From the NCBI GenBank assembly GCA_002269645.1, contig NIVC01000389.1, positions 1-64,000 of the forward strand: 64,000 bases of DNA, given 5' to 3'. The position numbers and the translations under genes are program-made. Shown piece after piece: positions 7,384 through 57,576 of this stretch; the first letter of the stretch is position 1, and every line of letters begins with the position of its first letter. Below the pieces are notes generated by a model. The model was given only the letters and a program-made list of their open reading frames with translations, ran no database searches and was not told the origin of the DNA. The DNA comes from Macrostomum lignano. Lineage: Eukaryota.

Positions 7384-7946
7384 AAGATTCTTTTAAGCAC
7401 ACGCACACGTACATGTATTAGTTTTTTATGTGCCTACAACTAGTAGATAAACAATATCACCACTCTCTGGGCTTCCAAGTAGTAAAATATGTGAAGCTCA
7501 CAGGTCAGAGGTGACGCGTCCAACTATTGCAGTCTCTGGCGTCAATGATGGACGACAATTCGGCCTACATATGTAACCTTCAAGACATGCCTGACAATGA
7601 GAATGAGAAATAATCGTGCATACCGTCATGCTTCAATATTCATATATAATCCGCACCAGATGGTACAATAACGACTTGTAATTCATGACTAAATTGAGAT
7701 GCAAGTCAAACACTCTTCATTATGCGATATTGACTAATCAATTGGTTCATTTAGTACTTCTAGTAGTATCACTAAGAAGTAGAGCGAGAATGCGTTTGTT
7801 TCAGTGCCTGTTTGTTAATCGGAGACTCACAAATTTTATATGGTTTGTTTTACCCTCAAACTTTCTCACAATAATGCCCGCGCGATACTACTTACAAGCC
7901 TGTAAAGTAGACGAGCTGCTTTTGCACGCGTATATTCAAGGTGAAA

Positions 7947-8650
7947 TATAAAACTGATTTGTATGGAATGCTTATACAAAGTTATATTTTACTAATCCTA
8001 ACATAAAACATTGTGTCACCAAACATGCGCGAGCTATAAAAGTATTTATTACTTTCAATTAATTTTCATTACGCGAATGAATTTTACGTGAACAATTTTA
8101 TAAGCACGATACATTTTTGTTAAATAATTCAAATGATAACGGTTGTTACAAACACAAAATAATCTCAATTCTGTTTCTTACGTTTGGCCTTGACTTTTTA
8201 ATTCGAATTGGTTTTGCCTTTACACAGTGATTAACATTATTTTCATTAAGTATAAAGACTGGTTGGGAACAAAGACTCAATGCCCACCTGATTGTGCCGG
8301 CTTCCCGACGGTGCCAGACTACTGTTGCTGGGCGGCAGCAGCTGGCTGCAGAGGCACCGGCGGAGGCAGAGTGGGAAGGTAGATCAGCGTCAGCGCGTAC
8401 GCCACGTGACCGATGAGGCCGCCGCCGCCGCCGCCGCCGACTCCGCCGCTTCTGCCAGACTTCGAGTTTGACGCGGTCTCCGAGGCGGCCAGTTAGACCA
8501 GGCCGCACCAGACTGCGGCCAATGGCAGGCCGTCGAGCACCTGGGCGATGCGCTCCCGCCGCTGGCACTGCTCCAGCATCGGCCAGGCCGCCTCGCTCAG
8601 GCAGCGGCGAAGGTCGTCCTTGACGGCCGACTGTGGAAGCAGTTGTTTTT
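7947..8650 (-). pseudogene. Internally deleted remnant of a TMEM232 paralog (3' flank, one minisatellite unit, part of exon 6)
   Basis: 7947-8240 aligns to 24890-25190, and 8290-8650 is nearly identical to 26260-26610. Between them sit one GGGAACAAAGACTCAATG unit and the exon-6 donor context CCCACCTGAT. Exon 7 is absent. Confidence 0.8.
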
Positions 8651-27819: not shown

Positions 27820-30049
27820 AGTCAGTCAGTCAGTCAGTCAGTCAGTCAGTCAGTCAGTCAGTCAGTCAGTCAGTGAGTCAGTCAGTCAGTCAGTCAGTCA
27901 GTCAATCAGTCAGTCAGTCAGTCAGTGAGTCAGTCAGTCAGTCAGTCAGTCAGTCAGTCAGTCAGTCAATCAGTCAGTCAGTCAGTCAGTCAGTCAGTCA
28001 GTCAGTCAGTCAGTCAGTGAGTCAGTCAGTCAGTCAGTCAGTCAGTCAGTCAGTCAGTCAGTCAGTCAGTCAGTCAGTCAGTCAGTCAGTCAGTCAGTCA
28101 GTCAGTCAGTCAGTCAGTCAGTCAGTCAGTCAGTCAGTCAGTCAGTCAGTCAGTCAGTCAGTCAGTCAGTCAGTCAGTCAGTCAGTCAGTCAGTCAGTCA
28201 GTCAGTCAGTCAGTCAGTCAGTCAGTCAGTCAGTCAGTCAGTCAGCTCACCAGTTGCCCTGCTGCGCCATCCCGACGCTGCACTCAAGCAGGCCGTCTAG
28301 AGCTCCTTCAAGATCTCCGCCGAGGTGTCTGGCGCATCGCCAGACGTCCAGAGCGTGCCATAGCAGCGGGCTGAGCTCGTGCACCTCGGCAGTCACCAGC
28401 AACCGCAGTTCTGATGAAGCCGCCGGCCCGCCAGCACCAGGCTCAGCCTCCGCCGCTTCATCAGTTGCATCGACATTCTTATCGTCGTCGCTAACCTGAC
28501 CGGCGATCACTTTGCCGACCGCAACGATGAAGCTGTGACAGAAGGCGACGTCGGGATAGGCGGCGTACAGGTGCGCCAGCTGGGAGAAATCCTTCAGGTA
28601 GAGGGCCAGGCGGGAGCGGCTCTCGGCGTGCCTCCTGAGCTGGCCGGTCATGTGGTGGTAGAACAGGCGCAGGAAGGTCGCCTGCCCGACGCGGAGACTC
28701 TTCACTTCGGCGCTTCGGAGTGCGTCAGAGGCTGGCGACTCCGACTGGAGCCAGTAGAGCACGGTCTCGGCGATGTAGAACAGGGCTGGAATCTGGTAGT
28801 AGCCTACGGGAGCCTGCTCCAGCGAGATCACCAGCGTGTCTAGAGCGTCTGTGAAATGGCAGAATGAGGTTCTCTGAGGATGAGCATCTGATCTGAGAAT
28901 GGAGATCTGATCTAAGAATGGAGATCTGATCTGAGAATGGGGATCTCTGGGAATGAGGATCTAATCTGAGAATGGGGATCTGATCTGAGAATGGGGATCT
29001 CTGGGAATGAGGATCTAATCTGAGAATGGGGATCTGATCTGAGAATGGGGATCTCTGGGAATGAGGATCTGATCTGAGAATGGGGATCTGATCTGACAAT
29101 GGTGATCTCTGGGAATGAGGATCTCTGAGAATGAGCATCTGATCTGAGAATGAGGATCTCTGAGAATGAGGATCTCTGAGAATGAGGATCTAATCTGAGA
29201 ATGGGGATCTGATCTGAGAATGGGGATCTCTGGGAATGAGGATCTCTGAGAATGAGCATCTGATCTGAGAATGAGGATCTCTGGGAATGAGCATCTGATC
29301 TGAGAATGAGGATCTCTGAGAATGGGGATCTCTGGGAATGAGGATCAGATCTGAAAATGAGGAATCTGAACTGAGAATGAGGATTTCTGAGAATGAAGAT
29401 CTCTGAGAATGAGCATCTGATCTGAGAATGAGTATCTGATCTGAGAATGAGGGCGAGATTAGCTGTCCACTGTCCCTCCATGACCGCCTCTCGATCTGCG
29501 TATTCTTTTGTCTTATAATGTAATAAATCTAACTTATGGAAGTTTTGGTAAAACTAGCATATAGTTAACAATAAAGTACATGTGTACTGAAGCAAAGTGC
29601 ATGCGCACCCTGATGCACGCGGCCCCGACAGTGGGCCAGAAAGACCAGTTCAGTCCAAGCGAAAGGCAAGTTTACGTGCTGCCCGACGCCGCCGTCGCGA
29701 AGTCCCGCCCGGCGACGGACTCGAGCCAGCAGGCGCTGAGCCTCGGCCTCGCACGCGGTCTTCTCAGTGGCCGACTGGGCAGAATTATACTTTTTAATAA
29801 AAGCGTCGGTGACCTCGAACGGATTCCTGACAGATTGGTTGAGAAAAAGTGGATTAGTGAATTAATAGTCTTGATTAAGTCCTCTTTTAGTGTTGAGGAT
29901 AAACTGGGCTTTTACTTCTTCGATTGAAATCCTTCCTTCTCTTTGCCATCGAGTAGAGCCGCCTGAAGCAGTCTTTCTTGTAGTTCAAGTCGGCGACTAT
30001 GGGATATAATCCCAAACTTGTGCACTACTGGCAAGTGAAGTAGTGGCAT
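25407..30049 (-). CDS. TMEM232: Transmembrane protein 232. Exons 30049-29916, 29826-29609, 28848-28251, 27583-27459, 27375-26918, 26591-26079, 25508-25407
   Basis: Phase-consistent GT-AG model. Family motifs VHKFGIISHSRRLELQERLL, HVNLPFAWTELVFLAHCRG, IPALFYIAETVLYWL, RLFYHHMTGQL, WRIRYLALQ and EDQ|WRK. Confidence 0.85.
25570..26060. repeat. 17-bp minisatellite (GGGACAAAGACTCAATG) in TMEM232 intron 6
   Basis: Perfect units at 25915-26040, degenerate toward the left. Confidence 0.9.
26655..26900. repeat. ~35-bp minisatellite containing TTAGGG in TMEM232 intron 5
   Basis: About 7 units of CAGTGAGGGATTAGGGGGGATCGGGTCTGAGA(T/C)AG. Confidence 0.9.
27633..28245. repeat. (GTCA)n microsatellite filling TMEM232 intron 3
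   Basis: About 150 tetramer units; source of the SQSV ORFs. Confidence 0.95.
28860..29450. repeat. Compound minisatellite (CTGAGAATGGGGATCT variants) in TMEM232 intron 2
   Basis: Tandem variants of 14-19 bp. Confidence 0.9.
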
Positions 30050-31299
30050 TCTTCCAAAGATTCTTGATTAAAAGTCGAGCTAGATTTGTGCAGTTGACAT
30101 GCTGAAGTTTTTTTATTATGTATTGTCAAGTTATATTTTGTTCTATGTTATAGTTATTTTAAACTATATCAAAATATTCCTAAAAAGTAAATTAAACAAA
30201 GGGTAAGTCTAATTATACTAACAGAAATGAGAAATAAGCCATGATTTTCTGCTAAAAGTATGAAAGTCGACAAAAAACTATAAGTACTACAAGTATTATG
30301 CTAATTTCAATAGAAATTACTTATCAGTCTTATAATCAACACACATTAAAAACTTCTTTGGAATATATTTAAACGGTACACCATTTAACATGAAAATACA
30401 AATTTCAGGTTATTTAGTAAAAAATGATGCAGCATGCAATGCCAATAAAAATACTGCCTCGTAGTATTCACAATTCAAAATTCTATTTTTCTTAATTGAA
30501 ATAAATTTAAAGCCCTTATCTCCTTAAGATATATTTATGTCCTTCATTTATGTCCTTAAGACCTTCAAATGAATGACTTCATTATTATTTTCCGAAACTA
30601 GTATAAATATTTGAAGTTCAAGTAGGATCAATGATCGATTATACTACTGTGTACACAACCAAGACAAAACTGAATGTAAATCAAAAATTTGTTGAAATTT
30701 TAGCCAAAACGAAGAACGCACGAACTTCCTAAATGCTAAGGTAAAGAAAATTATTCTCTGCATAAGCATATGTGTAAAATACTGTTTGTTTGTTTTAGAG
30801 TAAAAACTGATTAAATTTTAACAAATAGAAACCTATAAAGAAATTTAAAAAACAACAGCTACTAAAATTGTTATAATAAACATCTCACGGAATGAAATAA
30901 AATTATTTGATAAACGGCTAAATCACAAACGGCAGATTCTTAGATTTTATAATTTTTCTAACAAATAAACAAAAAAATTTAAGGCCTGTAAGAAACGTAT
31001 ATTTACCGTATGCTCTAGAAAACGCTCAAGGGGTTGGGGTTTGGCAATGAACTGCAGATTTAATATCGGTCGAATATATCCAAGCTGCCTAGAAAAAAAC
31101 TTCAGTTAATTGCTAAAGAGTCGAGGTTCGCTGCTTCGCTGAAAAATTCAGACGATGCGGTAATTTACTGGTCGTAAGTAAAAAACGATTATTTAATAAT
31201 TCATTACACGGCTGACTTCTCGAGAAATTAACTGAGGATCAAGAAAAATCCGATCCGTAATGTAGCTATATACATGCAATGTAGCATACAAATTGCAAA

Positions 31300-31570
31300 A
31301 ATTCTGCGGCGTTAAAAATAAGTGCCTGCGTCGCTAAAGTCAGTGCCTGCGGCGCCAAAATAAGTGACGCGGGGCCCAAAAGGAACTTGCATGCATGACT
31401 GCGGGGCCAAAATAAGTGCAGACTGCGGCCGGGCCATGAATATATGCATGACTGCGGGGCCAATTGATAGTTATCTGCGGCACTAAAATGATGGCCGGCG
31501 GCCGCAGCCTACGGTGCTAAAGTGAGTGCCTGCGGTGCCAAAATGAGTGCCTAGGAAGCGCTAAATAAGT
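31300..31570. repeat. Degenerate ~21-bp GC-rich tandem repeat (GCCTGCGG..CCAAAATAAGT)
   Basis: About 11 diverged units forming a GC island in the AT-rich spacer. Confidence 0.6.
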
Positions 31571-34500
31571 GTCAATTTAACGCCAAAAATGATCCCGCAC
31601 AACACCGATTCTAAAAAAATATGTACAGCTGTATACATGCACTGCATGTAGAATTCTTTGCTCCCCCCATAAAATCCATGGCAACCGCCCCTGCTACTCT
31701 GATTCAATGAAAGTGTTTCAGTTGTGCAGAAAGATTGTGAGGTCGTGACGTTGTCGGATGACATTCCGTAAAGCAAAAAGTGAATTATTTAATTTACCCT
31801 GCTGATTTTTTGCAGATCAAATAAAAAAATATACTTTATACATGTAGGCTTGAAACTTTGAAAACTAGAACTATCAAGTCATTGAATTTTTTTTAATCTT
31901 CTCTTTGTGGCCCGAAAAAAACGATTATTCACAAGATTGTAATTTGTTCGAAATGAAACCTCTTGAAACTTCTACGAAACAATCCGACAATAGCGCTCTC
32001 AGCGACGACAGTGTGATGTTTAGGCCTATTGAAATTTCTTGGATCGTATGCACCATCTCTCTAATTTTTGTTACTTATTATTTTTAATGTCTAGTGTAAG
32101 AGGTTTCACTAGCACAACAAAATCTTATACATATTGACGTTATTTAAATGAAAGGTGCTTAGCTAAGCCTATCAATGTTAGGCACTTCAGTGAGAAAATT
32201 AAATTTCAGAAATTGTTATAGGCTGCTATTTCACTAGATAGATCTTACTTTCCCATTTCCAAAATGGCCAAACTTTAGTGATTTGGTTGAGTAATAAGGA
32301 AACTACAGCTATTTTAGTAACCCCGATTTGTGCCTTTAGCCAATGGAATTTTTACATTACGGTTTGTGATCATTTTTGGCCAAAAAGTTGGCTTTTTGTC
32401 TTTGAACACTTGTAATTAATTTTCTAGCCAACCAAAATGACTGTGCTTGGTGTCATTTTGTTCAGTTTTTTAGTGTTAATTGTATGAATTATATATTTTA
32501 ATATTATTTTATATGCCCAAGTTGCTAAGCTAATTGAAACAGGATGGGTGTATGAAATTTTGACTATTTTAACCAGAAACGCAATGATTGCAATTTTAAA
32601 AATACAATAGCATCTGTTCTGCTTGCTTAATTTATACAAGGCTAGTGTCATTTTGTTCAGGTTTTTACCTACTATAATACTATTCTACTTCTTGCCCTAA
32701 ATTTTTAATGCATGACAGACACCCCAACTGCAATGTAATGTGCTGTACAGGCTTTGCGCATGGGTTTATTAAAAAACGGTTTTGTCTATCGTGTTCAGCA
32801 TAGCAGAATTAGTTAAATGACACAGAGAACTAGTTTGCCGGAAGGCAGAGTCTCACAAAAAACACGAAATACACGTTTCAATGGGTATTTTACATGTAAA
32901 CGTATCAAAAAAAGAAACCTCCACAAAATTTTTGCGCCTATAGCTATTGGCAAGCGGTTTTTTTACTGTGCTTGTATTGTCAATAGGTAATGAAAAATAT
33001 AAAGAGAAACAATGCAGGAAAAGGATTTCATGGAAAATTTTGGATTTGAAATTTTGCATAGAGCCATATGGGCATTAAAAGAAAAAAAAATTTTTTTTAA
33101 CACCAGAAAAATGTTTCTAAATTATCCCTTTACACTATAAAACCTTTGTTTCCATTATAAGAAACACATTGCAGCTAAGAAAAAGCATTTTCTGAACCAC
33201 TGTTTTTTTATTCATTTTGGCTTCAATTTTATATTCCTCCTAAAAAATGGTCAACTTTAAAAATAGACAGTGCAAAAAGTATAACAAAGCTAGACTTGCA
33301 GTTGGTGTCATTTGAAAGAGCTCCTTTTTACCTTTTAAATGCATATTTTACTTTCATCCTGGCTTCTATAGTTTCTTTAAAATCGCCCTTGAAAAATTGG
33401 ACTTTTTTCTTACTTTTTTGCCATTGGCACGCACTTCTTATAACTCACTGAAGTCCCTATCAATGTAACAATTTCAGCCTATCATGTAAACTGTAATCAT
33501 CAGTTTAGTTTATATGCCTACTATATGGCAATGTACCATAGGGCCCTACTGAGTTGCTTCAAATCTAAGACATTTAATATGTACTGTTTTGTCCTTCAGA
33601 AGTTGGTGCTAGGCCTAGTTGGTATGTATTTATTCCTGGCATCTATGAGGGATAGGCCTCATCCCTCATAGGCTTATAGATCAGTTAGTTAGGCCCTAGT
33701 GTCAGGTATAGTTGTATAGGTAGAAACTTTAGTAATGCTAGGCCTAAGGCAAGAAAGGGTCATGTAACTTGCTAGAGAATAGGCCTATGATATATGCTAG
33801 GGTCTATGCATGCAAAAGACAAATAAAAAATAGAATTAGGCCCAGCAAATGAATAGGCCTAGCTTTGCAATCTAATTAGGGCCTACATTATATAGGCCTA
33901 GGCTTAGGCCTAGAAAAAAAGCAAATAGACCTAGCCCTCCCTATAAACTATAAAAAAGGAACAAAATTTCTTAGGCTTATCATCTGTTCTGTAATCATAT
34001 AGAGATTAGGGGTCTAATTAAAAAATAATGCTAATTAAGAAAAAAATATATATCATTATCAATAAATCAATATTCTTTTTTTATTATCATAGATCACATA
34101 GTACTATCCATAGGCCTATGGGAGTTGGGACTTTTGATATATGATCCCCTTTAGAAGATAACAAAATTAGGGCCTATAAGTTTAAATTATTCTTAAAATC
34201 AAACTTCAAAATAAGACCACTTTTAAGCTTTTATCATAGCATCAAATCTTGTGTTTTGTTAGGAATATACTATAGAGTATAGCTTTTATTCAGTTTTGTT
34301 ATAAAATCATTTAAATGGTGAATTTATATGCAGATAATTGTAAGATAAAACTAAAAGAGCTTATTGATTGGTTTCAAATAATGTCAATGATCACATCAAT
34401 AATAAAATTATATTATTTTTTTTAAATTTTAAGAAATTTTTGGTAATTCTAATAGGTTTTAGCCTGGGTCTAAAATAAATATTTTGACAGGTATAACTTA

Positions 34501-34583
34501 TATAGTTTGTGATTCTTATATTATTTTATTTACTAGCATTTTAAGGAACTTTAAAATAATTTTAAAAATTCTTAGGCCTAGTC

Positions 34584-35051
34584 TAGATGGTATCCAGTCA
34601 ATCCGGCGACAAGACAATCCGGCGACAGACGATCTGGCGACAGTCAATCTGGCAAAATTCAATCCGGCGACAGATATTAAATCAATGTATATCAGCATAT
34701 TTATGGATTAGTTGAGCTATTTTTTAGCTCTTTATTATTACCTATTAATACTTAAATAATAAAATAACAATTACATAAACTATAATTGTTGCAGTTATAT
34801 TTTTAGAGCTGTATGTAGCTGTTGATTTTCAATATGTTATTTTCAAAGACAATCAATCAATTTAATCTGCTTGGAAAGCAAGTTTCTATGACTATGATCA
34901 ATATTGTTGTATATATTGTATTTGTGACAGATATTGTATTTAATATCTGTTGCCAGATTGTTTGTCGCTGGATTGACTATTGCCAGATTGTCTGTCGCCG
35001 GATTGACTGTTGCCAGATCGTCTTGTCGCCGGACTGTCTGGAAGCCGTCTA
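34584..35051. mobile_element. Foldback-type MITE with ~100-bp TIRs built from 15-bp subrepeats (AATCCGGCGACA)
   Basis: 34584-34680 is the inverted counterpart of 34940-35051. Both ends sit in CTAG; TSD ambiguous. Confidence 0.75.
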
Positions 35052-36136
35052 GATCAATATGTATAATATAATGTACAAAGCCAATTTTTAATCATTATTA
35101 TTTTTAAGTTCCTAATGAAAAATATCAAAAAGACCTTAATTTTTTTATATAATTGTAGCCAAAGTTGTAATATACTTTTGCCTTCCTTACCTAAAATATA
35201 TTCTATCTTTGATATTAAAATCTATAATTGGGACAATTATATAGCACCTTTGTATATTTCTAATAATATAATATGTATTAGTTCTATAACATGTAGCATT
35301 GGTAATATATCATGTTCAAATAATTGTAATCTTAGCCTGAATAATTTATGACTATATATCTAAATATATGTGTAACCTCTAAAATTATATAGGCCTAAAA
35401 TTATATATATTATATAAAATTATTTCTGAGTTATCTAACAAAAAATATTCTATTGTTTGTCAAGATTTGTCAAAAATCATTAATTTTGTTGTTTACCCTT
35501 GGTTTGCCACAATTTATGCTAGTTAGATTTGTAGGATTAGTCAGTAATTATATAATATTATAATATTTTATTTCTTGTATTTATCTGATAATTAAATATT
35601 TATATTTATATTTGCTTCTATTGAGGGTTTTTGTAGTCTAAGTATTGGATTAACACATTGCATTAAAACCTTTCACTTTTAAATTAACTACCTAGATACT
35701 ATCTAGTATTATTATATATGTTAATATATATTGTATTATATTTGTTAACTAATTTGTTAATATACTAGTGCAATTTTTAGATAGTTGGAATTTTTTTATG
35801 TATACTAAGCTTACCTAAGCAATCTAGACTACATTTTAAATAAGCATAAAAATACTCTAAATAAACTTGTTTAAATAGACTGCAACATTTTTGTTGACAG
35901 TTTTCATTGTTTAGAGATATAATTTTAGATGGTTAATTTTGTATGTATATATTTTTGAATTAGTACTATCTTTAGAAAGGGGTCATTTGCCCAACTCACT
36001 CTGTCCCAAAGATGTTTTTAGTAGTATATATAGAGATTTAGTATATTTTTATTTATTAAAGCATAAGAAATAATAATTTAATGCACTAACAATCTTGTAT
36101 TGAATTAGCTTGAAAAAATATTGCTGCCACTTTAAG

Positions 36137-46496: not shown

Positions 46497-49400
46497 TTGC
46501 ATCCCCCATTCTTCACGTCCAAATCTTTGCATCCCCCATTCTTCACATCCAAATCTTTGCATCCCCCATTTTTCACGTCCAAATCTTTGCATCCCCCATT
46601 CTTCACATCCAAATCTTTGCATCCCCCATTTTTCACGTCCAAATCTTTGCATCTCCCATTCTTCACGTCCAAATCTTTGCATTCCACATTCTTCACGTCC
46701 AAATCTTTGCACCCCCATTCTTCACGTCCAAATCTTTGCATCCCCCATTCTTCACGTCCAAATCTTTTCACCCCCCATTCTTCACGTCCAAATCTTTGCA
46801 TCCCCCATTCTTCACGTCCAAATCTCCTCACCCCCCATTCTTCACGTCCAAATCTTTGCATCCCCCATTCTTCACGTCCAAATCTCTGCACCCCCCATTC
46901 TTCACGTCCAAATCTCTGCACCCCCCATTCTTCACGTCCAAATCTTTGCATCCCACAATCTTCACGTCCAAATCTTTGCATCCCCCATTCTTCACGTCCA
47001 AATCTCTGCACCCCCCATTCTTCACGTCCAAATCTCTGCATCCCCATTCTTCACGTCCAAATCTTTGCATCCCCCATTCTTCACGTCCAAATCTCCTCAC
47101 CCCCCATTCTTCACGTCCAAATCTCTGCATCCCCATTCTTCACGTCCAAATCTCCTCACCCCCCATTCTTCACGTCCAAATCTCCTCACCCCCCATTCTT
47201 CACGTCCAAATCTTTGCATCCCCCATTCTTCACGTCCAAATCTCCTCACCCCCCATTCTTCACGTCCAAATCTTTGCATCCCCCATTCTTCACGTCCAAA
47301 TCTTTGCATCCCACAATCTTCACGTCCAAATCTCTGCACCCCCCATTCTTCACGTCCAAATCTCTGCACCCCCCATTCTTCACGTCCAAATCTCTGCACC
47401 CCCCATTCTTCACGTCCAAATCTTTGCATTCCACATTCTTCACGTCCAAATCTCTGCACCCCCCATTCTTCACGTCCAAATCTCTGCACCCCCCATTCTT
47501 CACGTCCAAATCTCTGCATCCCCATTCTTCACGTCCAAATCTTTGCATCCCCCATTCTTCACGTCCAAATCTCTGCACCCCCCATTCTTCACGTCCAAAT
47601 CTCTGCATCCCCATTCTTCACGTCCAAATCTCTGCACCCCCCATTCTTCACGTCCAAATCTCTGCACCCCCCATTCTTCACGTCCAAATCTTTGCATCCC
47701 ACAATCTTCACGTCCAAATCTTTGCATCCCCCATTCTTCACGTCCAAATCTCTGCACCCCCCATTCTTCACGTCCAAATCTCTGCATCCCCATTCTTCAC
47801 GTCCAAATCTTTGCATCCCCCATTCTTCACGTCCAAATCTCCTCACCCCCCATTCTTCACGTCCAAATCTCTGCATCCCCATTCTTCACGTCCAAATCTC
47901 CTCACCCCCATTCTTCACGTCCAAATCTCCTCACCCCCCATTCTTCACGTCCAAATCTTTGCATCCCCCATTCTTCACGTCCAAATCTCCTCACCCCCCA
48001 TTCTTCACGTCCAAATCTTTGCATCCCCCATTCTTCACGTCCAAATCTTTGCATCCCACAATCTTCACGTCCAAATCTCTGCACCCCCCATTCTTCACGT
48101 CCAAATCTCTGCACCCCCCATTCTTCACGTCCAAATCTCTGCACCCCCCATTCTTCACGTCCAAATCTTTGCATTCCACATTCTTCACGTCCAAATCTCT
48201 GCACCCCCCATTCTTCACGTCCAAATCTCTGCACCCCCCATTCTTCACGTCCAAATCTCTGCATCCCCATTCTTCACGTCCAAATCTTTGCATCCCCCAT
48301 TCTTCACGTCCAAATCTCTGCACCCCCCATTCTTCACGTCCAAATCTCTGCATCCCCATTCTTCACGTCCAAATCTCCTCACCCCCATTCTTCACGTCCA
48401 AATCTCCTCACCCCCCATTCTTCACGTCCAAATCTTTGCATCCCCCATTCTTCACGTCCAAATCTCTGCATCCCACAATCTACACATCCCAAATCTTCAC
48501 ATTCCACCATCTACACATCCCAAATCTTCACATTCCACAATCTGCACATTCCACAATCTGCACATCCCACAATCTTCACATCACAATCTTCACATTCCAC
48601 AATCTTCACATCACAATCTTCACATTCCACAATCTTCACATCACAATCTTCACATTCCACAATCTTCACATCACAATCTTCACATTCCACAATCTTCACA
48701 TCACAATCTTCACATTCCACATTCTTCACATCACAATCTTCACATTCCACAATCTTCACATCACAATCTTCACATTCCACAATCTTCACATCACAATCTT
48801 CACATTCCACAATCTTCACATCACAATCTTCACATTCCACAATCTTCACATCACAATCTTCACATTCCACAATCTTCACATCACAATCTTCACATTCCAC
48901 AATCTTCACATCACAATCTTCACATTCCACAATCTTCACATCACAATCTTCACATTCCACAATCTTCACATCACAATCTTCACATTCCACAATCTTCACA
49001 TCACAATCTTCACATTCCACAATCTTCACATCACAATCTTCACATTCCACAATCTTCACATCACAATCTTCACATTCCACAATCTTCACATCACAATCTT
49101 CACATTCCACAATCTTCACATCACAATCTTCACATTCCACAATCTTCACATCACAATCTTCACATTCCACAATCTTCACATCACAATCTTCACATTCCAC
49201 AATCTTCACATCACAATCTTCACATTCCACAATCTTCACATCACAATCTTCACATTCCACAATCTTCACATCACAATCTTCACATTCCACAATCTTCACA
49301 TCACAATCTTCACATTCCACAATCTTCACATCACAATCTTCACATTCCACAATCTTCACATCACAATCTTCACATTCCACAATCTTCACATCACAATCTT

Positions 49401-50580
49401 CACATTCCACAATCTTCACATCACAATCTTCACATTCCACAATCTTCACATCACAATCTTCACATTCCACAATCTTCACATCACAATCTTCACATTCCAC
49501 AATCTTCACATCACAATCTTCACATTCCACAATCTTCACATCACAATCTTCACATTCCACAATCTTCACATCACAATCTTCACATTCCACAATCTTCACA
49601 TCACAATCTGCACATTCCACAATCTTCACATCACAATCTTCACATCACAATCTTCACATCACAATCTTCACATTCCACAATCTTCACATCACAATCTTCA
49701 CATTCCACAATCTTCACATCACAATCTTCACATTCCACAATCTTCACATCACAATCTTCACATTCCACAATCTTCACATCACAATCTTCACATTCTACAA
49801 TCTTCACATCACAATCTTCACATTCCACAATCTTCACATCACAATCTTCACATTCCACAATCTTCACATCACAATCTTCACATTCCACAATCTTCACATC
49901 ACAATCTTCACATTCCACAATCTTCACATCACAATCTTCACATTCCACAATCTTCACATCACAATCTTCACATTCCACAATCTTCACATCACAATCTTCA
50001 CATTCCACAATCTTCACATCACAATCTTCACATTCCACAATCTTCACATCACAATCTTCACATTCCACAATCTTCACATCACAATCTTCACATTCCACAA
50101 TCTTCACATCACAATCTTCACATTCCACAATCTTCACATCACAATCTTCACATTCCACAATCTTCACATCACAATCTTCACATTCCACAATCTTCACATC
50201 ACAATCTTCACATCACAATCTTCACATTCCACAATCTTCACATCACAATCTTCACATTCCACAATCTTCACATCACAATCTTCACATTCCACAATCTTCA
50301 CATCACAATCTTCACATTCCACAATCTTCACATCACAATCTTCACATTCCACAATCTTCACATCACAATCTTCACATTCTACAATCTTCACATCACAATC
50401 TTCACATTCCACAATCTTCACATCACAATCTTCACATTCCACAATCTTCACATCACAATCTTCACATTCCACAATCTTCACATCACAATCTTCACATTCC
50501 ACAATCTTCACATCACAATCTTCACATTCCACAATCTTCACATCACAATCTTCACATTCCACAATCTTCACATCACAATC
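46497..50580. repeat. 4.1-kb satellite: 29-30-bp unit (CCCCCATTCTTCACGTCCAAATCTTTGCAT) switching near 48480 to a 30-bp 14+16 dimer (CACAATCTTCACAT + CACAATCTTCACATTC)
   Basis: Directly visible. The lack of stop triplets on the + strand explains the three 1380-1400-aa ORFs. Confidence 0.97.
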
Positions 50581-51189: not shown

Positions 51190-51490
51190 AATGAGAACTT
51201 GGGATCCTTAGAGACTTGGGATTTGGGAGGGACTTGGGATCCTTCAGGATTTGGGATTCGGGAGGGACTTGGGATCCTTAGAGACTTGGGATTCGGGAGG
51301 GACTTGGCATCATTCAGGATTTGGGATTCGGGAGGGACTTGGCATCATTCAGGATTTGGGATTCGGGAGGGACTTGGGATCCTTCTGAATTTGGGATTCG
51401 GGAGGGACTTGGGATCCTTCGACCGCGATTTGGGATTCAGGGGGAACTTGGTATGATTCAGGATTTTGGGATTTAAGACATGGGATCCCG
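51190..51490. repeat. G-rich ~35-bp minisatellite (GGGATTCGGGAGGGACTTGGGATCCTTCAGGATTT)
   Basis: About 8 units with many GGG runs. Confidence 0.85.
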
Positions 51491-51718
51491 TTAGATGATG
51501 GATTTTGCTAGACTTCATTACTCAGAACCTAAGAATGTTTAAATATTCGCTAAGTATTCAAAATTTCGTCATCATTGCAGGTTTGCACACTCCAAATCGC
51601 TAACGCCGCTTCCAACTTTGGCGGTTTAAAACAAAATTCCAGGCAAAGAAGACTTAAATAAGCAAATATTCGATTTCTAATTGAGGCTTAAGGCAAATAT
51701 TACTTATTGCTTGTTGCT

Positions 51719-53920
51719 ATGGCCGCCGCGGCCGCAGCAGCAGCCGCCGCAGCATCTGCGGGCCCGCCGGGTCCCAGCGGCCGTGGCCTGGTGCTGTTCC
51801 AGAGCACCATCCAGAATGCCAGCATGCTGCTTGGCCAGCTGTCCGAACTGCAACTTCTGGAGGCTGTGCGCACCATCCACTCGTTGCAGGACCGGGCGTT
51901 GAGCATCCTGCTGCCCAGGTGTGGCAGGTCGCTTCAGATGCTCATGCAGCAGCCGCAGCATCAGCTATCGACACAGCCTCCTGCGCCACCACATCAGCAG
52001 CAACAACAGCAGCAACAGAAGCAGCAACAGCAACAGCATCGACAACTTCAACAACCGCGACCGCCGGCTCCTAGACCTTCGGCGCCAAGGCCGCAGCCGC
52101 CTCAGCAGCAGCAACAACAGCAGCAGCCGCCGCCACCACAGCAGCGTTTGGCTCCGCCAAGCTCCAGCCAAATGTCGGACTACACCGCCGCCTTGCCAGC
52201 TGTAGGCATCAAGCGATCTAACAGCGTGCCGGATCTGGCAGCAGATGAACCCGCGCCCAAGACGGCCAGGTTGTTGCAGGCGCAGCAGCAGCAGCAGCCG
52301 CCCCCGCCTCCTCCTCCTCCAACATCGGCTTCTTGCCAGCAGCGACCGCCAATGCCCGGCTTCAGCCATCAGCAGCGCCCGCCTCTGCCTCGGCCTCCAC
52401 CGCCGCCGCCACCTCCGCTGCAGCATCTGCAGCAGATGCAACAAATGCAACAGATGCAGCACCGGGCCCAGCATCCTCAGCAGCATCCTCATCATCATCC
52501 TCCTCCTCAGCATCAGCATCCCCAGCATCCGGCAACTATGTCGCCTCATCGGCCCAGGCCGCCGTTGCCGCCGCAGTCGCCCCAGCAGTTGCCGCAGATG
52601 CCAACTTCGGCGGCAACAACGCGATTTCCGTTCGGTCTGCCGCCAGGCATGCCGCAGCAGCAGCCGCAGCACCGGCCGCCGCAGATGTCACCACATCATC
52701 TTGTGCAGCATCAGCAGCAGCCTCCGCATCCTCATCAGCATCCAGGAGTTCCTTCAGCTCAGCAGCAGCAGCAGCAGCGGAATACAATGTCTCCCGGCAA
52801 AATTCCGGCTTCGTCTTCTGCCGCCGCCGCCACCTCCTCCGCCGCCACTGCCGGAATTTTGACTGGCGGCGGCGGCGGCTATCGGCCGGCCCAGTCGCCT
52901 CATCAGCTACCGCCGTCTCAGCATCCGCAGCAACCAATGCCGCCGCCTCCGCCGTCGTATCAGCAGCAACAGCAGCAGCAAAGCCAGTACCGTCCCATGC
53001 AGCCGTCCTGCGATCTAGATGACGCCGACCAGCAGCAGCAGCAGCAGGACCGGATGATGTTTCACCGATTCCGCACCGCGCAGTACCTGCTGCACCGGCC
53101 GAACTGCATGTCAGCTCCTGACAGGGACTTCGACAACCGACTGTTGCAGGCCTGGTTCAGCTGCCCGCCGAGGGAGCGGCCGAGGCTCTACCGTCAGGCT
53201 GACGCTATTATTTCTGACGTTGATCCGACCGGATGCCGACGTCGGCAAGCTCACGCCTTGATGTCGCATGTGCCGCATCAGCAGCATCATCAGCTGCATC
53301 AGCAGCAGCAGCAGCATCAGCAGCCTCAGCACTCGCCAATGCCCAGCCTGCCCAGCCTAGCAGCCCTAGCCAGTTCACCTACCCACGATCTCATCCCGCC
53401 TTTGGTTGTATCGCCGCGTCCTCAGCAGCAGCAGCAGCCGCAGCAACAGCGGCAACAGACGCAACCAAACTCTGACGACGCCTCTGGCGGCGGTGGCAGC
53501 GGCTGCGCCAGCTCCGACTCGGTGCTCTCAGCCGCCATCGTCAAATCCGAGGCCACATTTGGTGCCGGCGCTGGCGGCGGTCTGGACGACGGCTACTGCC
53601 TGCAGCAGATGCACCTGCCGCTGCTCATGGAGCTGGAGCCGCCCGCTTCTGCCCAGCCTCCCGACGGCGACGGCGACAACGGCAACCATGAAGGCGACGG
53701 CGAAAATCGATCGACAGCAACACCGAATATTGTTGCCAATGGCAACGGGGACAACAGCAACAATGACAGCGGCGAGCAGCAGCAGCACGAGGAGCACCGG
53801 CCGACAGCAGAACCAGCCGAGGCACCAGCTGATGCCGCCGAAGCCGCCGCCACAACTGCCGAATCCAACAACAACAGCGGCAACAGCAGCTCAGCGTTTA
53901 ACGACAGCTCAGATGCTTGA
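51719..53920 (+). CDS. Orphan Q/P/H-rich protein (733 aa) with a helical N-terminal motif and a possible divergent HMG-box-like domain
   Basis: 2.2-kb uninterrupted ORF with CAG-coded polyQ in frame and two islands of complex sequence (51788-51910, 53048-53212). Confidence 0.75.
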   Translation: MAAAAAAAAAAASAGPPGPSGRGLVLFQSTIQNASMLLGQLSELQLLEAVRTIHSLQDRALSILLPRCGRSLQMLMQQPQHQLSTQPPAPPHQQQQQQQQKQQQQQHRQLQQPRPPAPRPSAPRPQPPQQQQQQQQPPPPQQRLAPPSSSQMSDYTAALPAVGIKRSNSVPDLAADEPAPKTARLLQAQQQQQPPPPPPPPTSASCQQRPPMPGFSHQQRPPLPRPPPPPPPPLQHLQQMQQMQQMQHRAQHPQQHPHHHPPPQHQHPQHPATMSPHRPRPPLPPQSPQQLPQMPTSAATTRFPFGLPPGMPQQQPQHRPPQMSPHHLVQHQQQPPHPHQHPGVPSAQQQQQQRNTMSPGKIPASSSAAAATSSAATAGILTGGGGGYRPAQSPHQLPPSQHPQQPMPPPPPSYQQQQQQQSQYRPMQPSCDLDDADQQQQQQDRMMFHRFRTAQYLLHRPNCMSAPDRDFDNRLLQAWFSCPPRERPRLYRQADAIISDVDPTGCRRRQAHALMSHVPHQQHHQLHQQQQQHQQPQHSPMPSLPSLAALASSPTHDLIPPLVVSPRPQQQQQPQQQRQQTQPNSDDASGGGGSGCASSDSVLSAAIVKSEATFGAGAGGGLDDGYCLQQMHLPLLMELEPPASAQPPDGDGDNGNHEGDGENRSTATPNIVANGNGDNSNNDSGEQQQHEEHRPTAEPAEAPADAAEAAATTAESNNNSGNSSSAFNDSSDA

Positions 53921-54043
53921 CCGGTTCAGTTCCGTGCGCACTGTCCTTAGGATCGCTAGTAGTATAGCAGAGACAGGGCAGTTCAACTTTATCGGAAGCA
54001 TTCATTCAAGGCTAGCTTATGCATCGGTTTTCAACTCCTGATA

Positions 54044-54188
54044 TGAAAGGTGTCCAAAAAGTAAAGTGGGAAATTTCAACCTAGCTTACAGTTGGATTCA
54101 GATTCAGCTGCCGGCATTCACAAGTTACATCCAATCTAGTACGTTCAATCTAGGTTGAAACTCCCCACTACTTTTTGGACACCTCTCG
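54044..54188. mobile_element. Tc1/mariner-type MITE (145 bp)
   Basis: About 40-bp imperfect TIRs (AGGTGTCCAAAAAGTA...TTTCAACCTAG) flanked by TA on both sides. Confidence 0.8.
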
Positions 54189-54759
54189 TAAATTTGACGG
54201 CATTGTCCTTCCTCCTCTACTGCAAGCAGTTTTTTGCTATTTTATTTTCTCTGTCGATATCGATACAATCGTCACATCTTGTCACATTATATACTACTGC
54301 TATTGTTACTCAGTAGGCAAGTAGCGCATTTTTTGCATTCGAATCTTTTCCGCTTATTTTTTTAAACTTCCCTCGGTAGGTAATGATCTTTATGCAACGA
54401 AAAAAAGCAGCAGCATTCGAGCTCCTGAGATTAACTACAGTTTCTCCTACTAAATCAGCAGAGAGTTTGCTTTGTTGCATAAATTCCTTCCTTGTAGTTC
54501 AATAACAGCTTGAGAAGTTTTGTTGTTTTGTTATATATATTTTTAATTTTCAATTTAGGCCACATATTTCTAAAGAAAACATTGCTTCTCCTCGCGTCCT
54601 TATAGTGTTATCCCTTCCAGTTGCCATGCTTCCAACAGTAACAGTTTTTGGCTGTAGTTTTGCGGGAGAAATTTTAATGCTCGGTTGCTGGCATCTATAT
54701 ACCTCAGCTAACTTATCTTGGTCAAACTCTCAAATCCTCTTGTTGAGTTGTCAGATCAT

Positions 54760-55650
54760 CAGCTCACGCTCTCAGATCCCCAGCTCACACACTCAGATCC
54801 TCAGACTACACTCCCAGATCCTCAGCTCACACTCTCAGATCCCCAGCTCACACTCTCAGATCCTCAGCTCAACACTCTCAGATCCTCAGATCAAACTCTC
54901 AGATCCTCAGCTCACACTCTCAGATCCTCAGCTCACACTCTCAGATCCTCAGCTCACACTCTCAGATCCTCAGCTCACACTCTCAGATCCTCAGCTCACT
55001 CTCAGATCCTCAGCTCACACACTCAGATCCTCAGCTCACATTCTCAGATCCTCAGCTCAACACTCCCAGATCCTCAGATCACATTCTCAGATCCTCAGCT
55101 CAACACTCCCAGATCCTCAGATCACATTCTCAGATCCTCAGCTCACACTCTCAGATCCTCAGCTCACACTCTCAGATCCTCAGCTCACACTCTCAGATCC
55201 TCAGCTCACACTCTCAGATCCTCAGCTCACACTCTCTGATCCTCAGCTCACACTCTCAGATCCTCAGCTCACACTCTCAGATCCTCAGCTCACACTCTCA
55301 GATCCTCAGCTCACACTCTCAGATCCTCAGCTCACACTCTCAGATCCTCAGCTCACACTCTCAGATCCTCAGCTCACACTCTCAGATCCTCAGCTCACAC
55401 TCTCAGATCCTCAGCTCACTCTCAGATCCTCAGCTCAACACTCCCAGATCCTCAGATCACATTCTCAGATCCTCAGCTCACACTCTCAGATCCTCAGCTC
55501 ACTATTCTCAGATCCTCAGCTCACACTCTCTGATCCTCAGCTCACACTCTCAGATCCTCAGCTCACACTCTCAGATCCTCAGCTCACACTCTCTGATACT
55601 CAGCTCACACTCTCTGATCCTCAGCTCACACTCTCAGATCCTCAGCTCAC
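54760..55650. repeat. 21-bp minisatellite (CAGATCCTCAGCTCACACTCT)
   Basis: About 42 units; source of ORFs 54605-55729 and 54718-55239. Confidence 0.95.
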
Positions 55651-56558
55651 ACTTCCAGTCCCTCAGGCGGACATTGCCACACTCAGATTCACAAATTGGG
55701 CAGAATTATTCAATCTTTCTTGCTTTTAAAATACTTGTAGCTTTTTCTGAACGTTCTTCCCAAGCTAGTAACATGTTGCGGCATTTTCTCAACTGATGAG
55801 AAAACTGACGTGATTGGCCCCCGATTTCTCAAAGCAAAGCGCAAGAAGTCCAGCTTTTTGGCATAATAACAGCTAGCAACAGTTTATTAATTTGGTTAGT
55901 CTAGGTTGAATAGCATCAAATAATTGTGTATCAATTCGATCTATAATAAATTTCTCTTTTTTATGTTGTTTTTTGTTAAATTAACAGAAAATTTTGTAAA
56001 TAGCGTTCACTCTGATCGAGTCACAATACTGTCACATCGATGTCGTTCTTCTATAAACGCATCATACATGCGCTAATGCTTGGACTTACCAATCTGTTAA
56101 TAGTAAAGTACTTTATCGCAACAACTTGTGTAAAATATCCGAGTATTACCAAACATATAATTTTGCTTCTTATATAGTGATTAAATAAACACGTTAAACT
56201 CTACCAATTTTTGCTGAGGTGACTGACACAATCAGAATTCAGTTTTATAGTTGTAGTCTGAGAAAATATTCTGTTTTTCTTTACTTTTGCGTTTTTCTCC
56301 GTTTAATTTCGAGCCTTTTGACCATAGACTATGGAAAGCAATGGTTGGGCCACCCCCCTCCCCACGATTGCTTTTTTCCATGGCTGCTCGATGCATTGTA
56401 GCTGTTGGGTTGTGATTAGTCTATGGCCGAGCTCCCCGTCTCCTAGGCTAGATAGCTAGTCTGTTGAAGTCCATAGAGGCGATAGAAAATTTTGTCTCTA
56501 TCTCAGTTGTTTAGTATTTTAGCTACTTTTACTTGATTTGGCAAATCTCACATTAACT

Positions 56559-57576
56559 ATGGCCGATAGATCAACAACAACAGAAGACAAACAAGTCTTC
56601 ATAGAGCTGGCGCAGTTCCAAGACACCCTGGCCTGCGCCTCGGCCATGCTGCCTAATCTAGACCAGTCTGACTTGATGTCCGCCCTGCTGCTAGCTATGC
56701 AACTGCAGAGTAGAATAGTTGGTATTATGATGATGCCGGACGCCAGTAGCAGGCCAGCTGAAGACGGTCGGTGGTCTTCGACGACTGAGGCTTCTACTGA
56801 GTCGTCAGTGATGCCGGCAGAAGCGGAGGCTGAGCTAAATCAGGATCGTGTTGACGATGTTGCCACTGTCGCTATCGAGTCTGAGATTCTCAGCGGTGAG
56901 CTGGGCGGCGGTGAATTGCCGCAAGAGTCGCCGAGTCTCGATGATGCTGACGAGGACTCTCCTCCATCAGCAACAAAGCGAATCAAGCTCGAGCTGGCTG
57001 GCCAGCGAACGCAACCGCACGAGGAGCTCGGATTCTTCGTAGCCCAGGTTAACAGCGGTGAGAACGAATCGACCACAAGGGACGAAGAATGCGACTTTAT
57101 TGTCGATCCGGAGGATGGGGTGAGTTAGTAGACAAGAAATTACCTATCTCTAGCCAGCAATCGGCAAAGACCTGGTCCATAGATAATTACTTAATTTCAT
57201 CGATTGATAGATTGGGTGCAAATCTTATAACTTGTGCCTACCTTGACCCCACCTTGAAACTTAGCATGAAAGTGCACGCATGCGAAGCCGCGAAAATGCG
57301 ACGAAACCAATAATTCATTACTTTACTTCTTCCACGATACAGGGCTTCATTATTCCCGGTTTCACAATTGTCGATGGAAGCAGCCACTGTCAAGACTTCT
57401 CATCAGCTGAGCAATCTTCATCTTCACCTTCTTCAAGTTATTCCACGAAAACTGGGCCACCATCATTGCCTTTTTCTACTGGTCAACTGTTGCTCAACAG
57501 CCGAGTGGTGTCTGCCCTAACTAGGGCCGCCGTATTCGCCGCCGCCAACGGGAAAGTTCGAGAGTCAGGAAATTGA
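56559..57576 (+). CDS. Orphan acidic protein sharing the N-terminal motif of 51719-53920. Exons 56559-57119 and 57343-57576
   Basis: ATG in good context, GGG|GTGAGT donor and ATACAG|GGC acceptor, both phase 0. A basic NLS-like TKRIKLE is present. Confidence 0.65.

What the first reader, a model, noticed from the sequence alone, without database searches (positions are those of the whole stretch)
51788..56729. Two neighbouring orphan genes share an unrecognised 41-aa N-terminal domain
LVLFQSTIQNASMLLGQLSELQLLEAVRTIHSLQDRALSIL (51788-51910) and LAQFQDTLACASAMLPNLDQSDLMSALLLAMQLQSRIVGIM (56607-56729) align without gaps at 14/41 identities with a conserved hydrophobic period (LxxFQxTxxxASxxLxxLxxxxLxxAxxxxxxLQxRxxxI). 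The rest of the proteins is unrelated: one is polyQ/P with a possible DNA-binding domain, the other short and acidic with an NLS-like TKRIKLE. I do not recognise the motif. A long activator-like protein and a short partner sharing a helical module suggests a lineage-specific dimerising regulator pair, analogous to bHLH/Id or SCAN-only proteins.
Basis: partly seen in the sequence, partly recalled or inferred. Interest (0 to 1): 0.72.

Follow-up and report, generated by a model that had tools for sequence, protein, structure and literature searches.

The report
New helical domain in flatworm paralogues
Two adjacent genes of the flatworm Macrostomum lignano really do share a short, previously unclassified N-terminal two-helix domain, confirmed by a third bridging protein from an unidentified eukaryote, but what it does is still only a guess.

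Summary
The window is Macrostomum lignano contig NIVC01000389.1:1-64000. Both 41-aa segments translate as quoted and sit at the N-termini of two same-strand genes present in the RNA-seq-based NCBI annotation. Gene A is 51719-53920, one exon, 733 aa, Q/P-rich. Gene B is 56559-57576, two exons, 264 aa, acidic.

The A-B match alone is marginal: 14/41 identities, shuffle p about 4e-4, and default BLASTP reports nothing. An exhaustive profile search of 1.84 billion proteins found one outside hit, P0003 (E=3.8e-5), a 263-aa acidic two-exon protein from an ENA metagenome contig. It matches A (E=9e-11) and B (E=2e-7) over the same N-terminal stretch, so the three are homologous.

Pfam, PDB sequences, Foldseek, and a test against SERTA give no known family. 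UniProt's "Rubis-subs-bind" name for B is not reproducible with current Pfam.

AlphaFold2 predicts a two-helix hairpin in A and B at low confidence. Conserved hydrophobic residues follow heptad spacing. No significant similarity exists outside the domain.

Best reading: tandem paralogues of a lineage-restricted family whose N-terminal hairpin is a protein-protein or oligomerisation module. Dimerisation and gene regulation are untested inferences. Interest is modest.

The parts
51719..53920 (+). Gene A: single-exon CDS of 733 aa plus stop. Q/P-rich long form.
   Evidence: ORF. The ATG context is shown. It is annotated as a 733-aa gene in the RNA-seq-based NCBI annotation of NIVC01000389.1 (L003 is identical to the window). 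A 729-aa copy is annotated in L004. The ORF is intact but unannotated in L002.
51788..51910 (+). A N-terminal domain core, residues 24-64: LVLFQSTIQNASMLLGQLSELQLLEAVRTIHSLQDRALSIL
   Evidence: Translation. AlphaFold2 predicts helices at residues 22-37 and 43-64. BLASTP against P0003 gives E = 8.7e-11.
51929..53029 (+). A residues 71-437: low-complexity Q/P/H-rich region (25% Q, 25% P), predicted disordered
53030..53278 (+). A residues 438-520: basic, Arg-rich helical island (DRMMFHRFRTAQYLL...AHALMSHV). It is the only moderately confident folded part of the model.
   Evidence: AlphaFold2 predicts helices 438-457, 469-481, 484-501 and 506-516, with pLDDT 63-77 across residues 471-520. pI is 10.1. 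No Pfam, PDB or Foldseek relative was found.
53456..53917 (+). A residues 580-733: acidic Ala/Gly/Ser/Asn/Asp-rich tail (pI 4.05). It includes the weak motif DSVLSAAIVKSEATFGAGAGGGL at 53516-53584.
54751..55653 (.). 21-bp tandem repeat of 43 copies in the A-B intergenic spacer
56559..57119 (+). Gene B exon 1, residues 1-187. The GTGAGT splice donor starts at 57120.
   Evidence: It is 100% identical to UniProt M. lignano A0A1I8H0D5. The NCBI models Mlig007143g1-g3 are 5'-partial and start at 56571.
56607..56729 (+). B N-terminal domain core, residues 17-57: LAQFQDTLACASAMLPNLDQSDLMSALLLAMQLQSRIVGIM
   Evidence: Translation. AlphaFold2 predicts helices at residues 8-30 and 36-57 with pLDDT 55-60. 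BLASTP against P0003 gives E = 1.9e-7.
56973..56993 (+). B residues 139-145, TKRIKLE: a basic patch that resembles a nuclear localisation signal and also fits the sumoylation-type pattern psi-K-x-E. Inference only.
   Evidence: Read directly from the sequence.
57120..57342 (+). Gene B intron, 223 nt (GTGAGT...ACAG)
   Evidence: together with the gene model of P0001.
57343..57576 (+). Gene B exon 2, residues 188-264 plus stop. It includes a predicted C-terminal helix at residues 233-255.

Best explanation
Genes A and B are tandem paralogues of a small, fast-evolving, lineage-restricted protein family. The family is defined by an N-terminal domain of about 45 residues that is not yet classified anywhere.

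The domain folds as an antiparallel two-helix hairpin. Helix 1 carries the invariant pattern L-x2-F-x2-T-x3-A. A short polar loop follows. Helix 2 carries the invariant pattern L-x2-A-x6-L-Q and ends at a proline. Conserved hydrophobic residues sit at heptad spacing, at positions 1, 4, 8, 11, 15 and 18 of helix 1.

I infer that the hairpin is a protein-protein interaction module, most likely packing into a four-helix bundle. Through it, the long Q/P-rich form (A) and the short acidic form (B) would either pair with themselves and each other or compete for the same partner.

The short acidic two-exon form, seen in B and in P0003, is probably ancestral. A would then be a copy that acquired about 370 residues of Q/P low-complexity sequence and a basic helical island.

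Shown: the homology, the N-terminal position, the tandem arrangement, the existence of RNA-based gene models, and the absence from known families.
Inferred: the hairpin fold (low-confidence model), oligomerisation, nuclear or regulatory function, and the direction of evolution.
For: Homology:
- The A+B profile finds P0003 at E = 3.8e-5 among 1.84e9 proteins. P0003 is the only hit from outside M. lignano, and the match covers residues 9-57, so it is N-terminal as in A and B.
- A against P0003 gives E = 8.7e-11. B against P0003 gives E = 1.9e-7.
- Adding B to A raises the P0003 score from 30.1 bits (small local run, core-only model) to 39.5 bits (library search, 75-column profile). The two runs differ in setup, so this is only a rough sign that B carries family signal.
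- An HMM of A+P0003 finds B at E = 3.9e-5 among 1106 sequences.

Architecture:
- P0003 is 263 aa, acidic (pI 4.6) and has two exons. B is 264 aa, acidic (pI 4.1) and has two exons.

Fold:
- Independent single-sequence AlphaFold2 runs place two helices over the aligned region in both B (8-30, 36-57) and A (22-37, 43-64).
- Eight columns are invariant, and hydrophobic columns fall at 1, 4, 8, 11, 14/15, 18, 23/24, 27, 33, 37/38 and 40/41.

Genes are real:
- The annotation is RNA-seq based (PMC5730564). It contains A (733 and 729 aa) and B (g1-g3).
- All three genome copies keep the A ORF intact. There are four indels, all in frame, and 6 synonymous against 4 non-synonymous changes. None of these changes falls in the domain or in the helical island.

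Not a known family:
-.
Against: - The family rests on only three distinct sequences. The direct A-B comparison is marginal.
- The structure models have low confidence: pLDDT 46-60 over the domain, pTM 0.25-0.27. No multimer prediction could be run, so dimerisation has no direct support.
- The genome copies differ by only about 0.5%, so purifying selection cannot be measured. Flanking DNA differs by 0.1-2.5%. All 3-4 substitutions in B exon 1 are non-synonymous.
- The NCBI RNA-based models of B start at 56571, which is 12 nt after the genomic ATG and directly after an AG dinucleotide. Two UniProt models start at Met30 and lack helix 1. If the mRNA is trans-spliced at that AG, B might not carry a complete domain.
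- Searches with A itself saturated on low-complexity words. Relatives of A's helical island cannot therefore be excluded.
- The organism that encodes P0003 is unknown.
Confidence: 0.45

Rival explanations
1. The shared hairpin is a docking module for a common third partner rather than a self-association or hetero-association domain. Under this reading A and B are targeted to, or compete for, the same complex and never bind each other.
For: The data are the same as for the main explanation: a conserved single face on each helix and divergent remainders. Nothing in the data separates self-association from docking.
Against: There is no partner candidate and no test. Continuous heptad spacing on both helices is more typical of bundle-forming hairpins, but that is a weak argument.
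Confidence: 0.3
2. The domain is a very divergent member of a known family that the available searches could not reach. Candidates are SERTA, an HNF1/RIIa/Dpy-30-type dimerisation hairpin, the Rubisco-LSMT substrate-binding domain that UniProt's name implies, or a matrix metalloproteinase (MMP) prodomain-like helix bundle.
For: - UniProt names only the two full-length 264-aa B models 'Rubis-subs-bind domain-containing'. The two models that lack helix 1 are not so named. An older Pfam model therefore probably touched this region.
- The best PDB profile hit is the matrilysin (MMP7) prodomain at E = 0.094. A carries 'PRCG' at the position of the cysteine switch.
- SERTA proteins share the overall layout of a small acidic protein with an N-terminal helical motif. 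This last point is from memory only.
Against: - Current Pfam gives no hit at E <= 10 for whole proteins or for isolated domains.
- hhalign against a SERTA alignment gives probability about 0.1%.
- The MMP hit is not significant. B and P0003 lack the cysteine, and there is no catalytic domain.
- There is no SET domain.
- Foldseek finds nothing.
Confidence: 0.1
3. The A-B resemblance is a chance match between two leucine-rich amphipathic helical segments, and the genes are unrelated.
For: BLASTP with default settings reports nothing for A against B. phmmer E-values are 0.03-0.1 even in a search space of 1105 pieces. Shuffles nearly or just reach the observed score: the maximum is 57 against an observed 58, and 2 of 3000 shuffles reach it.
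Against: P0003 matches both A and B significantly over the same columns and at the same N-terminal position. The two genes are adjacent on one strand, and both domains start 16-23 residues after the initiator Met.
Confidence: 0.04
4. B is a decaying or truncated duplicate. Its mature mRNA loses the genomic ATG through trans-splicing, so only helix 2 onward (from Met30), or nothing, is made. Under this reading the 'pair' has no joint function.
For: All three RNA-based NCBI models are 5'-partial and begin at 56571, just after AG at 56568-69. The M. lignano spliced leader ends in ATG (PMC8629364), and by my reading of the frame that ATG would be out of frame at this site. Two UniProt models start at Met30. 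All substitutions in B exon 1 between genome copies are non-synonymous.
Against: - Helix 1 of B keeps the family's invariant residues L, F, T and A although the DNA has diverged completely from A. This is unexpected for untranslated sequence.
- The reading frame is open from 56523.
- The AG at 56568-69 does not fit the YTNCAG trans-splice acceptor motif.
- The B ORF and its splice sites are intact in all three copies.
Confidence: 0.11

Closest known systems
   Same: There is a long form with activator-like Q/P-rich sequence and a short form that shares only a short helical module. That module is predicted to be a helix-loop-helix-type hairpin with conserved hydrophobic faces.
   Different: There is no sequence relationship: no Pfam HLH or SCAN hit was found. 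No basic DNA-contact region adjoins the module. Dimerisation, nuclear localisation and any antagonism are untested.
SERTA-domain proteins (SERTAD1-4, CDCA4, Drosophila Taranis)
   Same: From memory, these are small acidic nuclear co-regulators of about 200-300 aa, plus one long Q-rich insect member. They carry a helical motif of about 40-45 aa near the N-terminus.
   Different: The defining SERTA motif is absent. Pfam gives no hit.
Rubisco LSMT substrate-binding domain (Pfam PF09273), the name UniProt gives to B
   Same: The UniProt name is attached only to B models that contain the whole N-terminal domain. Both domains are all-helical.
   Different: The match is not reproducible with current Pfam at E <= 10. 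There is no SET domain. The PDB profile search does not retrieve SETD3, SETD6 or LSMT.
Matrix metalloproteinase prodomain with the PRCGxPD cysteine switch
   Same: This is the best PDB profile match, though not a significant one (matrilysin, E = 0.094). It covers helix 1 through the 'PRCG' that follows helix 2 in A.
   Different: The match is not significant. The cysteine is absent from B and P0003. There is no protease domain. The resemblance is judged to be coincidence.

Membership tests
New A/B/P0003 family (unnamed) | An N-terminal two-helix segment of about 41-45 aa starting 8-23 residues after Met, with invariant L1, F4, T7, A11, L23, A26, L33, Q34 and a Pro shortly after helix 2 | tested here: met
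   Three-way alignment. Helices are predicted.
SERTA (PF06031) | A match to the SERTA profile or motif (S-L-x-K-L ... E-P-x-L-x-R-x-V-L-I-x-N-T-L; motif recalled from memory) | tested here: not met
   No Pfam hit at E <= 10. hhalign probability about 0.1%.
Rubis-subs-bind (PF09273) | A match to the PF09273 profile above its gathering score, normally located C-terminal to a SET domain | tested here: not met
   No hit for P0001 or for the isolated domain. No SET domain is present in the 264-aa protein.
bHLH / Id (PF00010) | HLH profile match. For bHLH proper, a basic region N-terminal to helix 1. | tested here: not met
   No Pfam hit. The residues before helix 1 are Gly/Pro-rich in A and acidic in B.
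SCAN (PF02023) | SCAN profile match: a five-helix dimerisation domain of about 84 aa | tested here: not met
   No Pfam hit. The domain here is about 45 aa with two helices.
MMP prodomain (PG_binding_1, PF01471) | A conserved cysteine switch PRCGxPD, followed by a zinc protease domain | tested here: not met
   The PDB profile hit at E = 0.094 is not significant. PRCG occurs in A only. No peptidase domain is present.
Four-helix-bundle dimerisation hairpins in general (a functional class, not a sequence family) | The isolated domain forms homo-oligomers or hetero-oligomers | not testable with these tools
   Only monomer AlphaFold2 was available, and there are no experimental data.

The most novel reading that the evidence does not exclude
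A and B are the founding pair of a previously unknown family of nuclear co-regulators, found in flatworms or more widely among invertebrates. The new N-terminal hairpin forms a four-helix-bundle dimer. The short acidic paralogue titrates or redirects the long Q/P-rich paralogue. The logic resembles Id/bHLH but is built on an unrelated fold.
Probability: 0.12. Interest if true: 0.55.

Novelty: new variant of a known kind. Interest (0 to 1): 0.3.

Why it matters
If the reading is right, it defines a new protein domain family. Three members are now known, and none is in Pfam or the PDB. It also gives a concrete hypothesis for two expressed M. lignano genes of unknown function, in an animal where RNAi and transgenesis are available.

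It also corrects a database label. The UniProt name 'Rubis-subs-bind domain-containing protein' for B is not supported by current models.

Lineage-restricted helical modules in fast-evolving disordered proteins are common, and no phenotype, localisation or partner is known. The finding is therefore a useful annotation and a testable lead, not a surprise.

Tried and rejected
1. Whole-protein A search and a search with the low-complexity parts removed, both in the 5.8-billion-protein index. Both saturated at 8000 word candidates and returned nothing. They are uninformative about A's relatives.
2. SERTA hypothesis, which came from comparing by eye. hhalign gives probability about 0.1% and Pfam gives no hit. 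Rejected.
3. The UniProt 'Rubis-subs-bind' label. It is not reproducible.
4. MMP-prodomain resemblance, including 'PRCG' in A. E = 0.094, and the cysteine is not conserved. Judged coincidental.
5. Resemblances by eye to the HNF1 dimerisation domain, RIIa/Dpy-30 and the INCENP N-terminus. There is no Pfam support. Dropped.
6. Foldseek of both AlphaFold2 models against the PDB. It found nothing usable, and the models are of low confidence.
7. Two scans of JGI metagenome contigs for more family members. None was found.
8. A search for further copies of the domain in the window and on the P0003 contig. None was found.
9. Similarity between A's C-terminal half and B or P0003. Nothing is significant. 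Only a weak colinear motif appears: A 600-622 against B 99-120, followed by GENRST in A and GENEST in B.
10. Measuring selection from the three genome copies. The copies are too similar for this.
11. Expression data for Mlig007143 in the supplements of four M. lignano papers. The identifier was not found in the held text.
12. Identifying the organism of ERZ25070786 from neighbouring genes or from papers. All cluster members come from ENA only and are unnamed.
13. The idea that the intronless gene A is a retrocopy of a spliced-leader-bearing mRNA, prompted by 'TTATTGC' upstream of its ATG. No spliced-leader-like 21-mer occurs in the window at up to 3 mismatches. Unsupported.

Full report
**What the window is**

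Gene B's ORF is 100% identical to UniProt proteins of the flatworm Macrostomum lignano. A 21-kb locus fetched from GenBank assembly GCA_002269645.1, contig NIVC01000389.1 positions 46571-67576, is base-for-base identical to the window wherever the two overlap (17,430 bases compared). Window coordinates therefore equal contig coordinates. The sequence is eukaryotic, repeat-rich DNA, so the bacterial-style ORF list must be read with care. Several ORFs of about 1,390 aa at 46.5-50.7 kb are artefacts of a 30-bp satellite.

**Checking the observation**

The two quoted peptides translate exactly as written. They align without gaps at 14/41 identities. Each lies at the start of a gene.

- Gene A begins at ATG 51719 and runs uninterrupted to the stop at 53918-53920, giving 733 aa. 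The shared segment is residues 24-64.
- Gene B begins at ATG 56559. Exon 1 ends at 57119 before a GTGAGT donor. A 223-nt intron ends in ACAG at 57342. Exon 2 runs to the stop at 57574-57576, giving 264 aa. The shared segment is residues 17-57.

Taken alone, the A-B similarity is borderline.

- BLASTP reports no alignment over the shared segment.
- phmmer makes the two segments reciprocal best non-self hits among 1105 six-frame pieces of the window, but only at E = 0.033 and 0.098.
- The Smith-Waterman score of 58 is reached by 2 of 3000 shuffles, and a Gumbel fit gives p about 4e-4.

**The decisive evidence: a third family member**

I built a profile from the two N-termini (alignment A1, 75 columns). 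I ran it with HMMER against all 1.84 billion representative proteins of the large library, a search that uses no word index. Only two proteins scored E <= 0.001:

- P0002, a B copy from M. lignano.
- P0003, at E = 3.8e-5 and 39.5 bits. Profile positions 14-62 match its residues 9-57.

P0003 comes from a 12-kb contig of ENA assembly ERZ25070786 (locus L001). The contig shows no DNA or tblastx similarity to the window. Reading the DNA gives a two-exon gene: 6759-7151, a 64-nt GT..AG intron, then 7216-7614. It encodes 263 aa.

P0003 is intermediate between A and B.

- It shares 18/41 identities with A and 13/41 with B over the core.
- BLASTP with default settings gives E = 8.7e-11 against A (43.8% over 48 aa) and E = 1.9e-7 against B.
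- Shuffle-based p values are about 1e-9 and 3e-6.
- An HMM of A+P0003 recovers B as the best remaining piece of the window, at 19.6 bits and E = 3.9e-5.
- Adding B to A raised P0003's score from 30.1 to 39.5 bits, although the two runs used different profiles.

The three segments are therefore homologous, and in all three proteins the domain is N-terminal. The three-way alignment has eight invariant columns: L1, F4, T7, A11, L23, A26, L33 and Q34. Hydrophobic columns fall at 1, 4, 8, 11, 14/15, 18 and at 23/24, 27, 33, 37/38, 40/41. That is heptad-like spacing on two segments separated by a polar loop at columns 19-22.

**Are the genes real?**

The NCBI annotation of this assembly is built from RNA-seq with StringTie/TACO, the TBONE boundary pipeline and TransDecoder (PMC5730564).

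- It contains A as a 733-aa single-exon gene at exactly 51719-53920. It contains B as Mlig007143g2.
- A second genome copy (L004) has both genes annotated, at 729 aa and 260 aa.
- In a third copy (L002) the A ORF is intact but unannotated.
- All three copies of this neopolyploid genome keep the order A, then about 2.6 kb, then B. In the two loci whose annotated stretch reaches that far (L003 and L004), a Mo25 gene lies about 9-10 kb downstream.

Between the window and L002, A shows 10 substitutions: 6 synonymous and 4 non-synonymous. All four non-synonymous changes lie outside the N-terminal domain and the helical island. There are also four indels, all in frame. The copies are too similar for a meaningful selection test: coding sequence differs by about 0.5% and flanks by 0.1-2.5%.

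One caveat remains. The RNA-based B models are 5'-partial and start at 56571, which is 12 nt after the ATG and directly after an AG. Two UniProt models start at Met30 and lack helix 1. The M. lignano spliced leader ends in ATG (PMC8629364), and by my reading of the frame that ATG would be out of frame at this site. B's helix 1 keeps the family's invariant residues, so I think it is translated. The 5' end of the mRNA still needs read-level data.

**What the proteins look like**

Gene A is 18% Q and 17% P. Its parts are:

- the N-terminal domain, with AlphaFold2 helices at 22-37 and 43-64;
- about 370 residues of Q/P/H low-complexity sequence;
- a basic, Arg-rich helical island at residues 438-520, with pI 10.1 and four predicted helices; pLDDT is 63-77 across residues 471-520, making this the only moderately confident part of the model;
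- an acidic tail with pI 4.05.

Gene B is acidic (pI 4.1). AlphaFold2 places helices at 8-30 and 36-57 (pLDDT 55-60), a disordered acidic middle that contains TKRIKLE, and a C-terminal helix at 233-255.

P0003 is also acidic (pI 4.6) and has the same length and exon number as B.

Outside the N-terminal domain nothing is significantly similar. I noted one weak colinear motif. DSVLSAAIVKSEATFGAGAGGGL in A corresponds to DDVATVAIESEILSGELGGGEL in B and LVAVSDERHCLYGEI in P0003. Further on, GENRST in A corresponds to GENEST in B. This hints that A may be a B-like protein expanded by low-complexity insertions, but it is not statistically supported.

**Comparison with known families**

- Pfam gives no hit at E <= 10 for A, B, P0003 or the isolated domains.
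- Sequence and profile searches of the PDB give nothing significant. The best is the matrilysin prodomain at E = 0.094. It includes a coincidental 'PRCG' in A that B and P0003 lack.
- Foldseek of the two low-confidence models finds nothing.
- A resemblance to SERTA proteins that I suspected by eye fails hhalign, with probability about 0.1%.
- UniProt's name for B, 'Rubis-subs-bind domain-containing protein', is attached only to the two models that include helix 1. An older profile therefore probably touched this domain. Current Pfam does not reproduce the hit, and there is no SET domain.

**Interpretation**

The best-supported account is that A and B are tandem paralogues of a small, fast-evolving family defined by a new N-terminal two-helix hairpin.

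The mechanism is inference. It rests on heptad-spaced conserved hydrophobic residues on both helices, on the hairpin prediction, and on the general behaviour of such modules. On that basis the hairpin mediates protein-protein interaction, most simply a four-helix-bundle dimer. This would let the long Q/P-rich form and the short acidic form associate with each other or compete for one partner.

A docking role for a third partner fits the data equally well.

I put homology at about 0.9, the hairpin fold at about 0.6 and dimerisation or regulation at about 0.3.

**Limits**

- The family has only three distinct sequences.
- The organism that encodes P0003 is unknown.
- Searches with A itself were swamped by low-complexity words.
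- No multimer prediction was available, and no expression or localisation data could be retrieved.

**Verdict**

At the sequence-family level it is a new domain shared by two expressed neighbouring paralogues and one outside homologue. Its functional interpretation remains a hypothesis, and its general interest is modest.

Noticed in passing
window 46500-50574: A 30-bp satellite of 136 copies on a strongly C-rich strand (GC skew down to -0.9). It produces sham ORFs of 1383-1399 aa in three frames and several more on the minus strand.
   Followed up: partly
window 51197-51473 and 54751-55653: A 35-bp tandem repeat lies immediately upstream of gene A. A 21-bp tandem repeat of 43 copies lies between A and B. 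Copy numbers differ in the paralogous loci L002 and L004.
   Followed up: partly
window 220-1901: Two ORFs carry cadherin domains (Pfam E = 1.7e-26 and 6.9e-23). They are probably exons of a large cadherin gene at the start of the window.
   Followed up: no
window 56559-56571: All three RNA-based NCBI models of gene B are 5'-partial. They start at 56571, which is 12 nt after the genomic ATG and just after an AG. Two UniProt models start at internal Met30 (56646). The M. lignano spliced leader ends in ATG, and by my reading of the frame that ATG would be out of frame at this site. The true 5' end and start codon of B are unresolved.
   Followed up: partly
UniProt A0A1I8H0D5 / A0A1I8JAF1 (= gene B, window 56559-57576): The database name 'Rubis-subs-bind domain-containing protein' is given only to B models that contain the full N-terminal domain. 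Current Pfam does not reproduce the match, so the label is probably wrong.
   Followed up: yes
L001 4615-5945 and 10145-11475: The P0003 gene lies between the arms of a perfect 1331-nt inverted repeat. ORFs in the arms belong to clusters of 64-68 members in ENA assemblies. A DIRS-like tyrosine recombinase and a reverse-transcriptase fragment lie upstream. This could be two inverted copies of a transposable element or an assembly artefact.
   Followed up: partly
window 51700-51718: 'TTATTGC', 12 nt upstream of the ATG of intronless gene A, equals the 3' part of the spliced leader (...TTTATTGCATG). This prompted the idea that A is a retrocopy. No spliced-leader-like 21-mer occurs in the window at up to 3 mismatches, so the match is probably chance.
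   Followed up: yes
window 53516-53584 (A) and 56853-56918 (B); L001 about 7008-7052: A weak second colinear motif appears. DSVLSAAIVKSEATFGAGAGGGL in A corresponds to DDVATVAIESEILSGELGGGEL in B and LVAVSDERHCLYGEI in P0003. Further on, GENRST in A corresponds to GENEST in B. Pairwise E is about 2, which is not significant. It may still mean that A is a B-like protein expanded by low-complexity insertions.
   Followed up: partly
window 30001-36000: An AT-rich stretch with GC of 25-34%, against about 45-55% elsewhere in the window. It was not examined.
   Followed up: no
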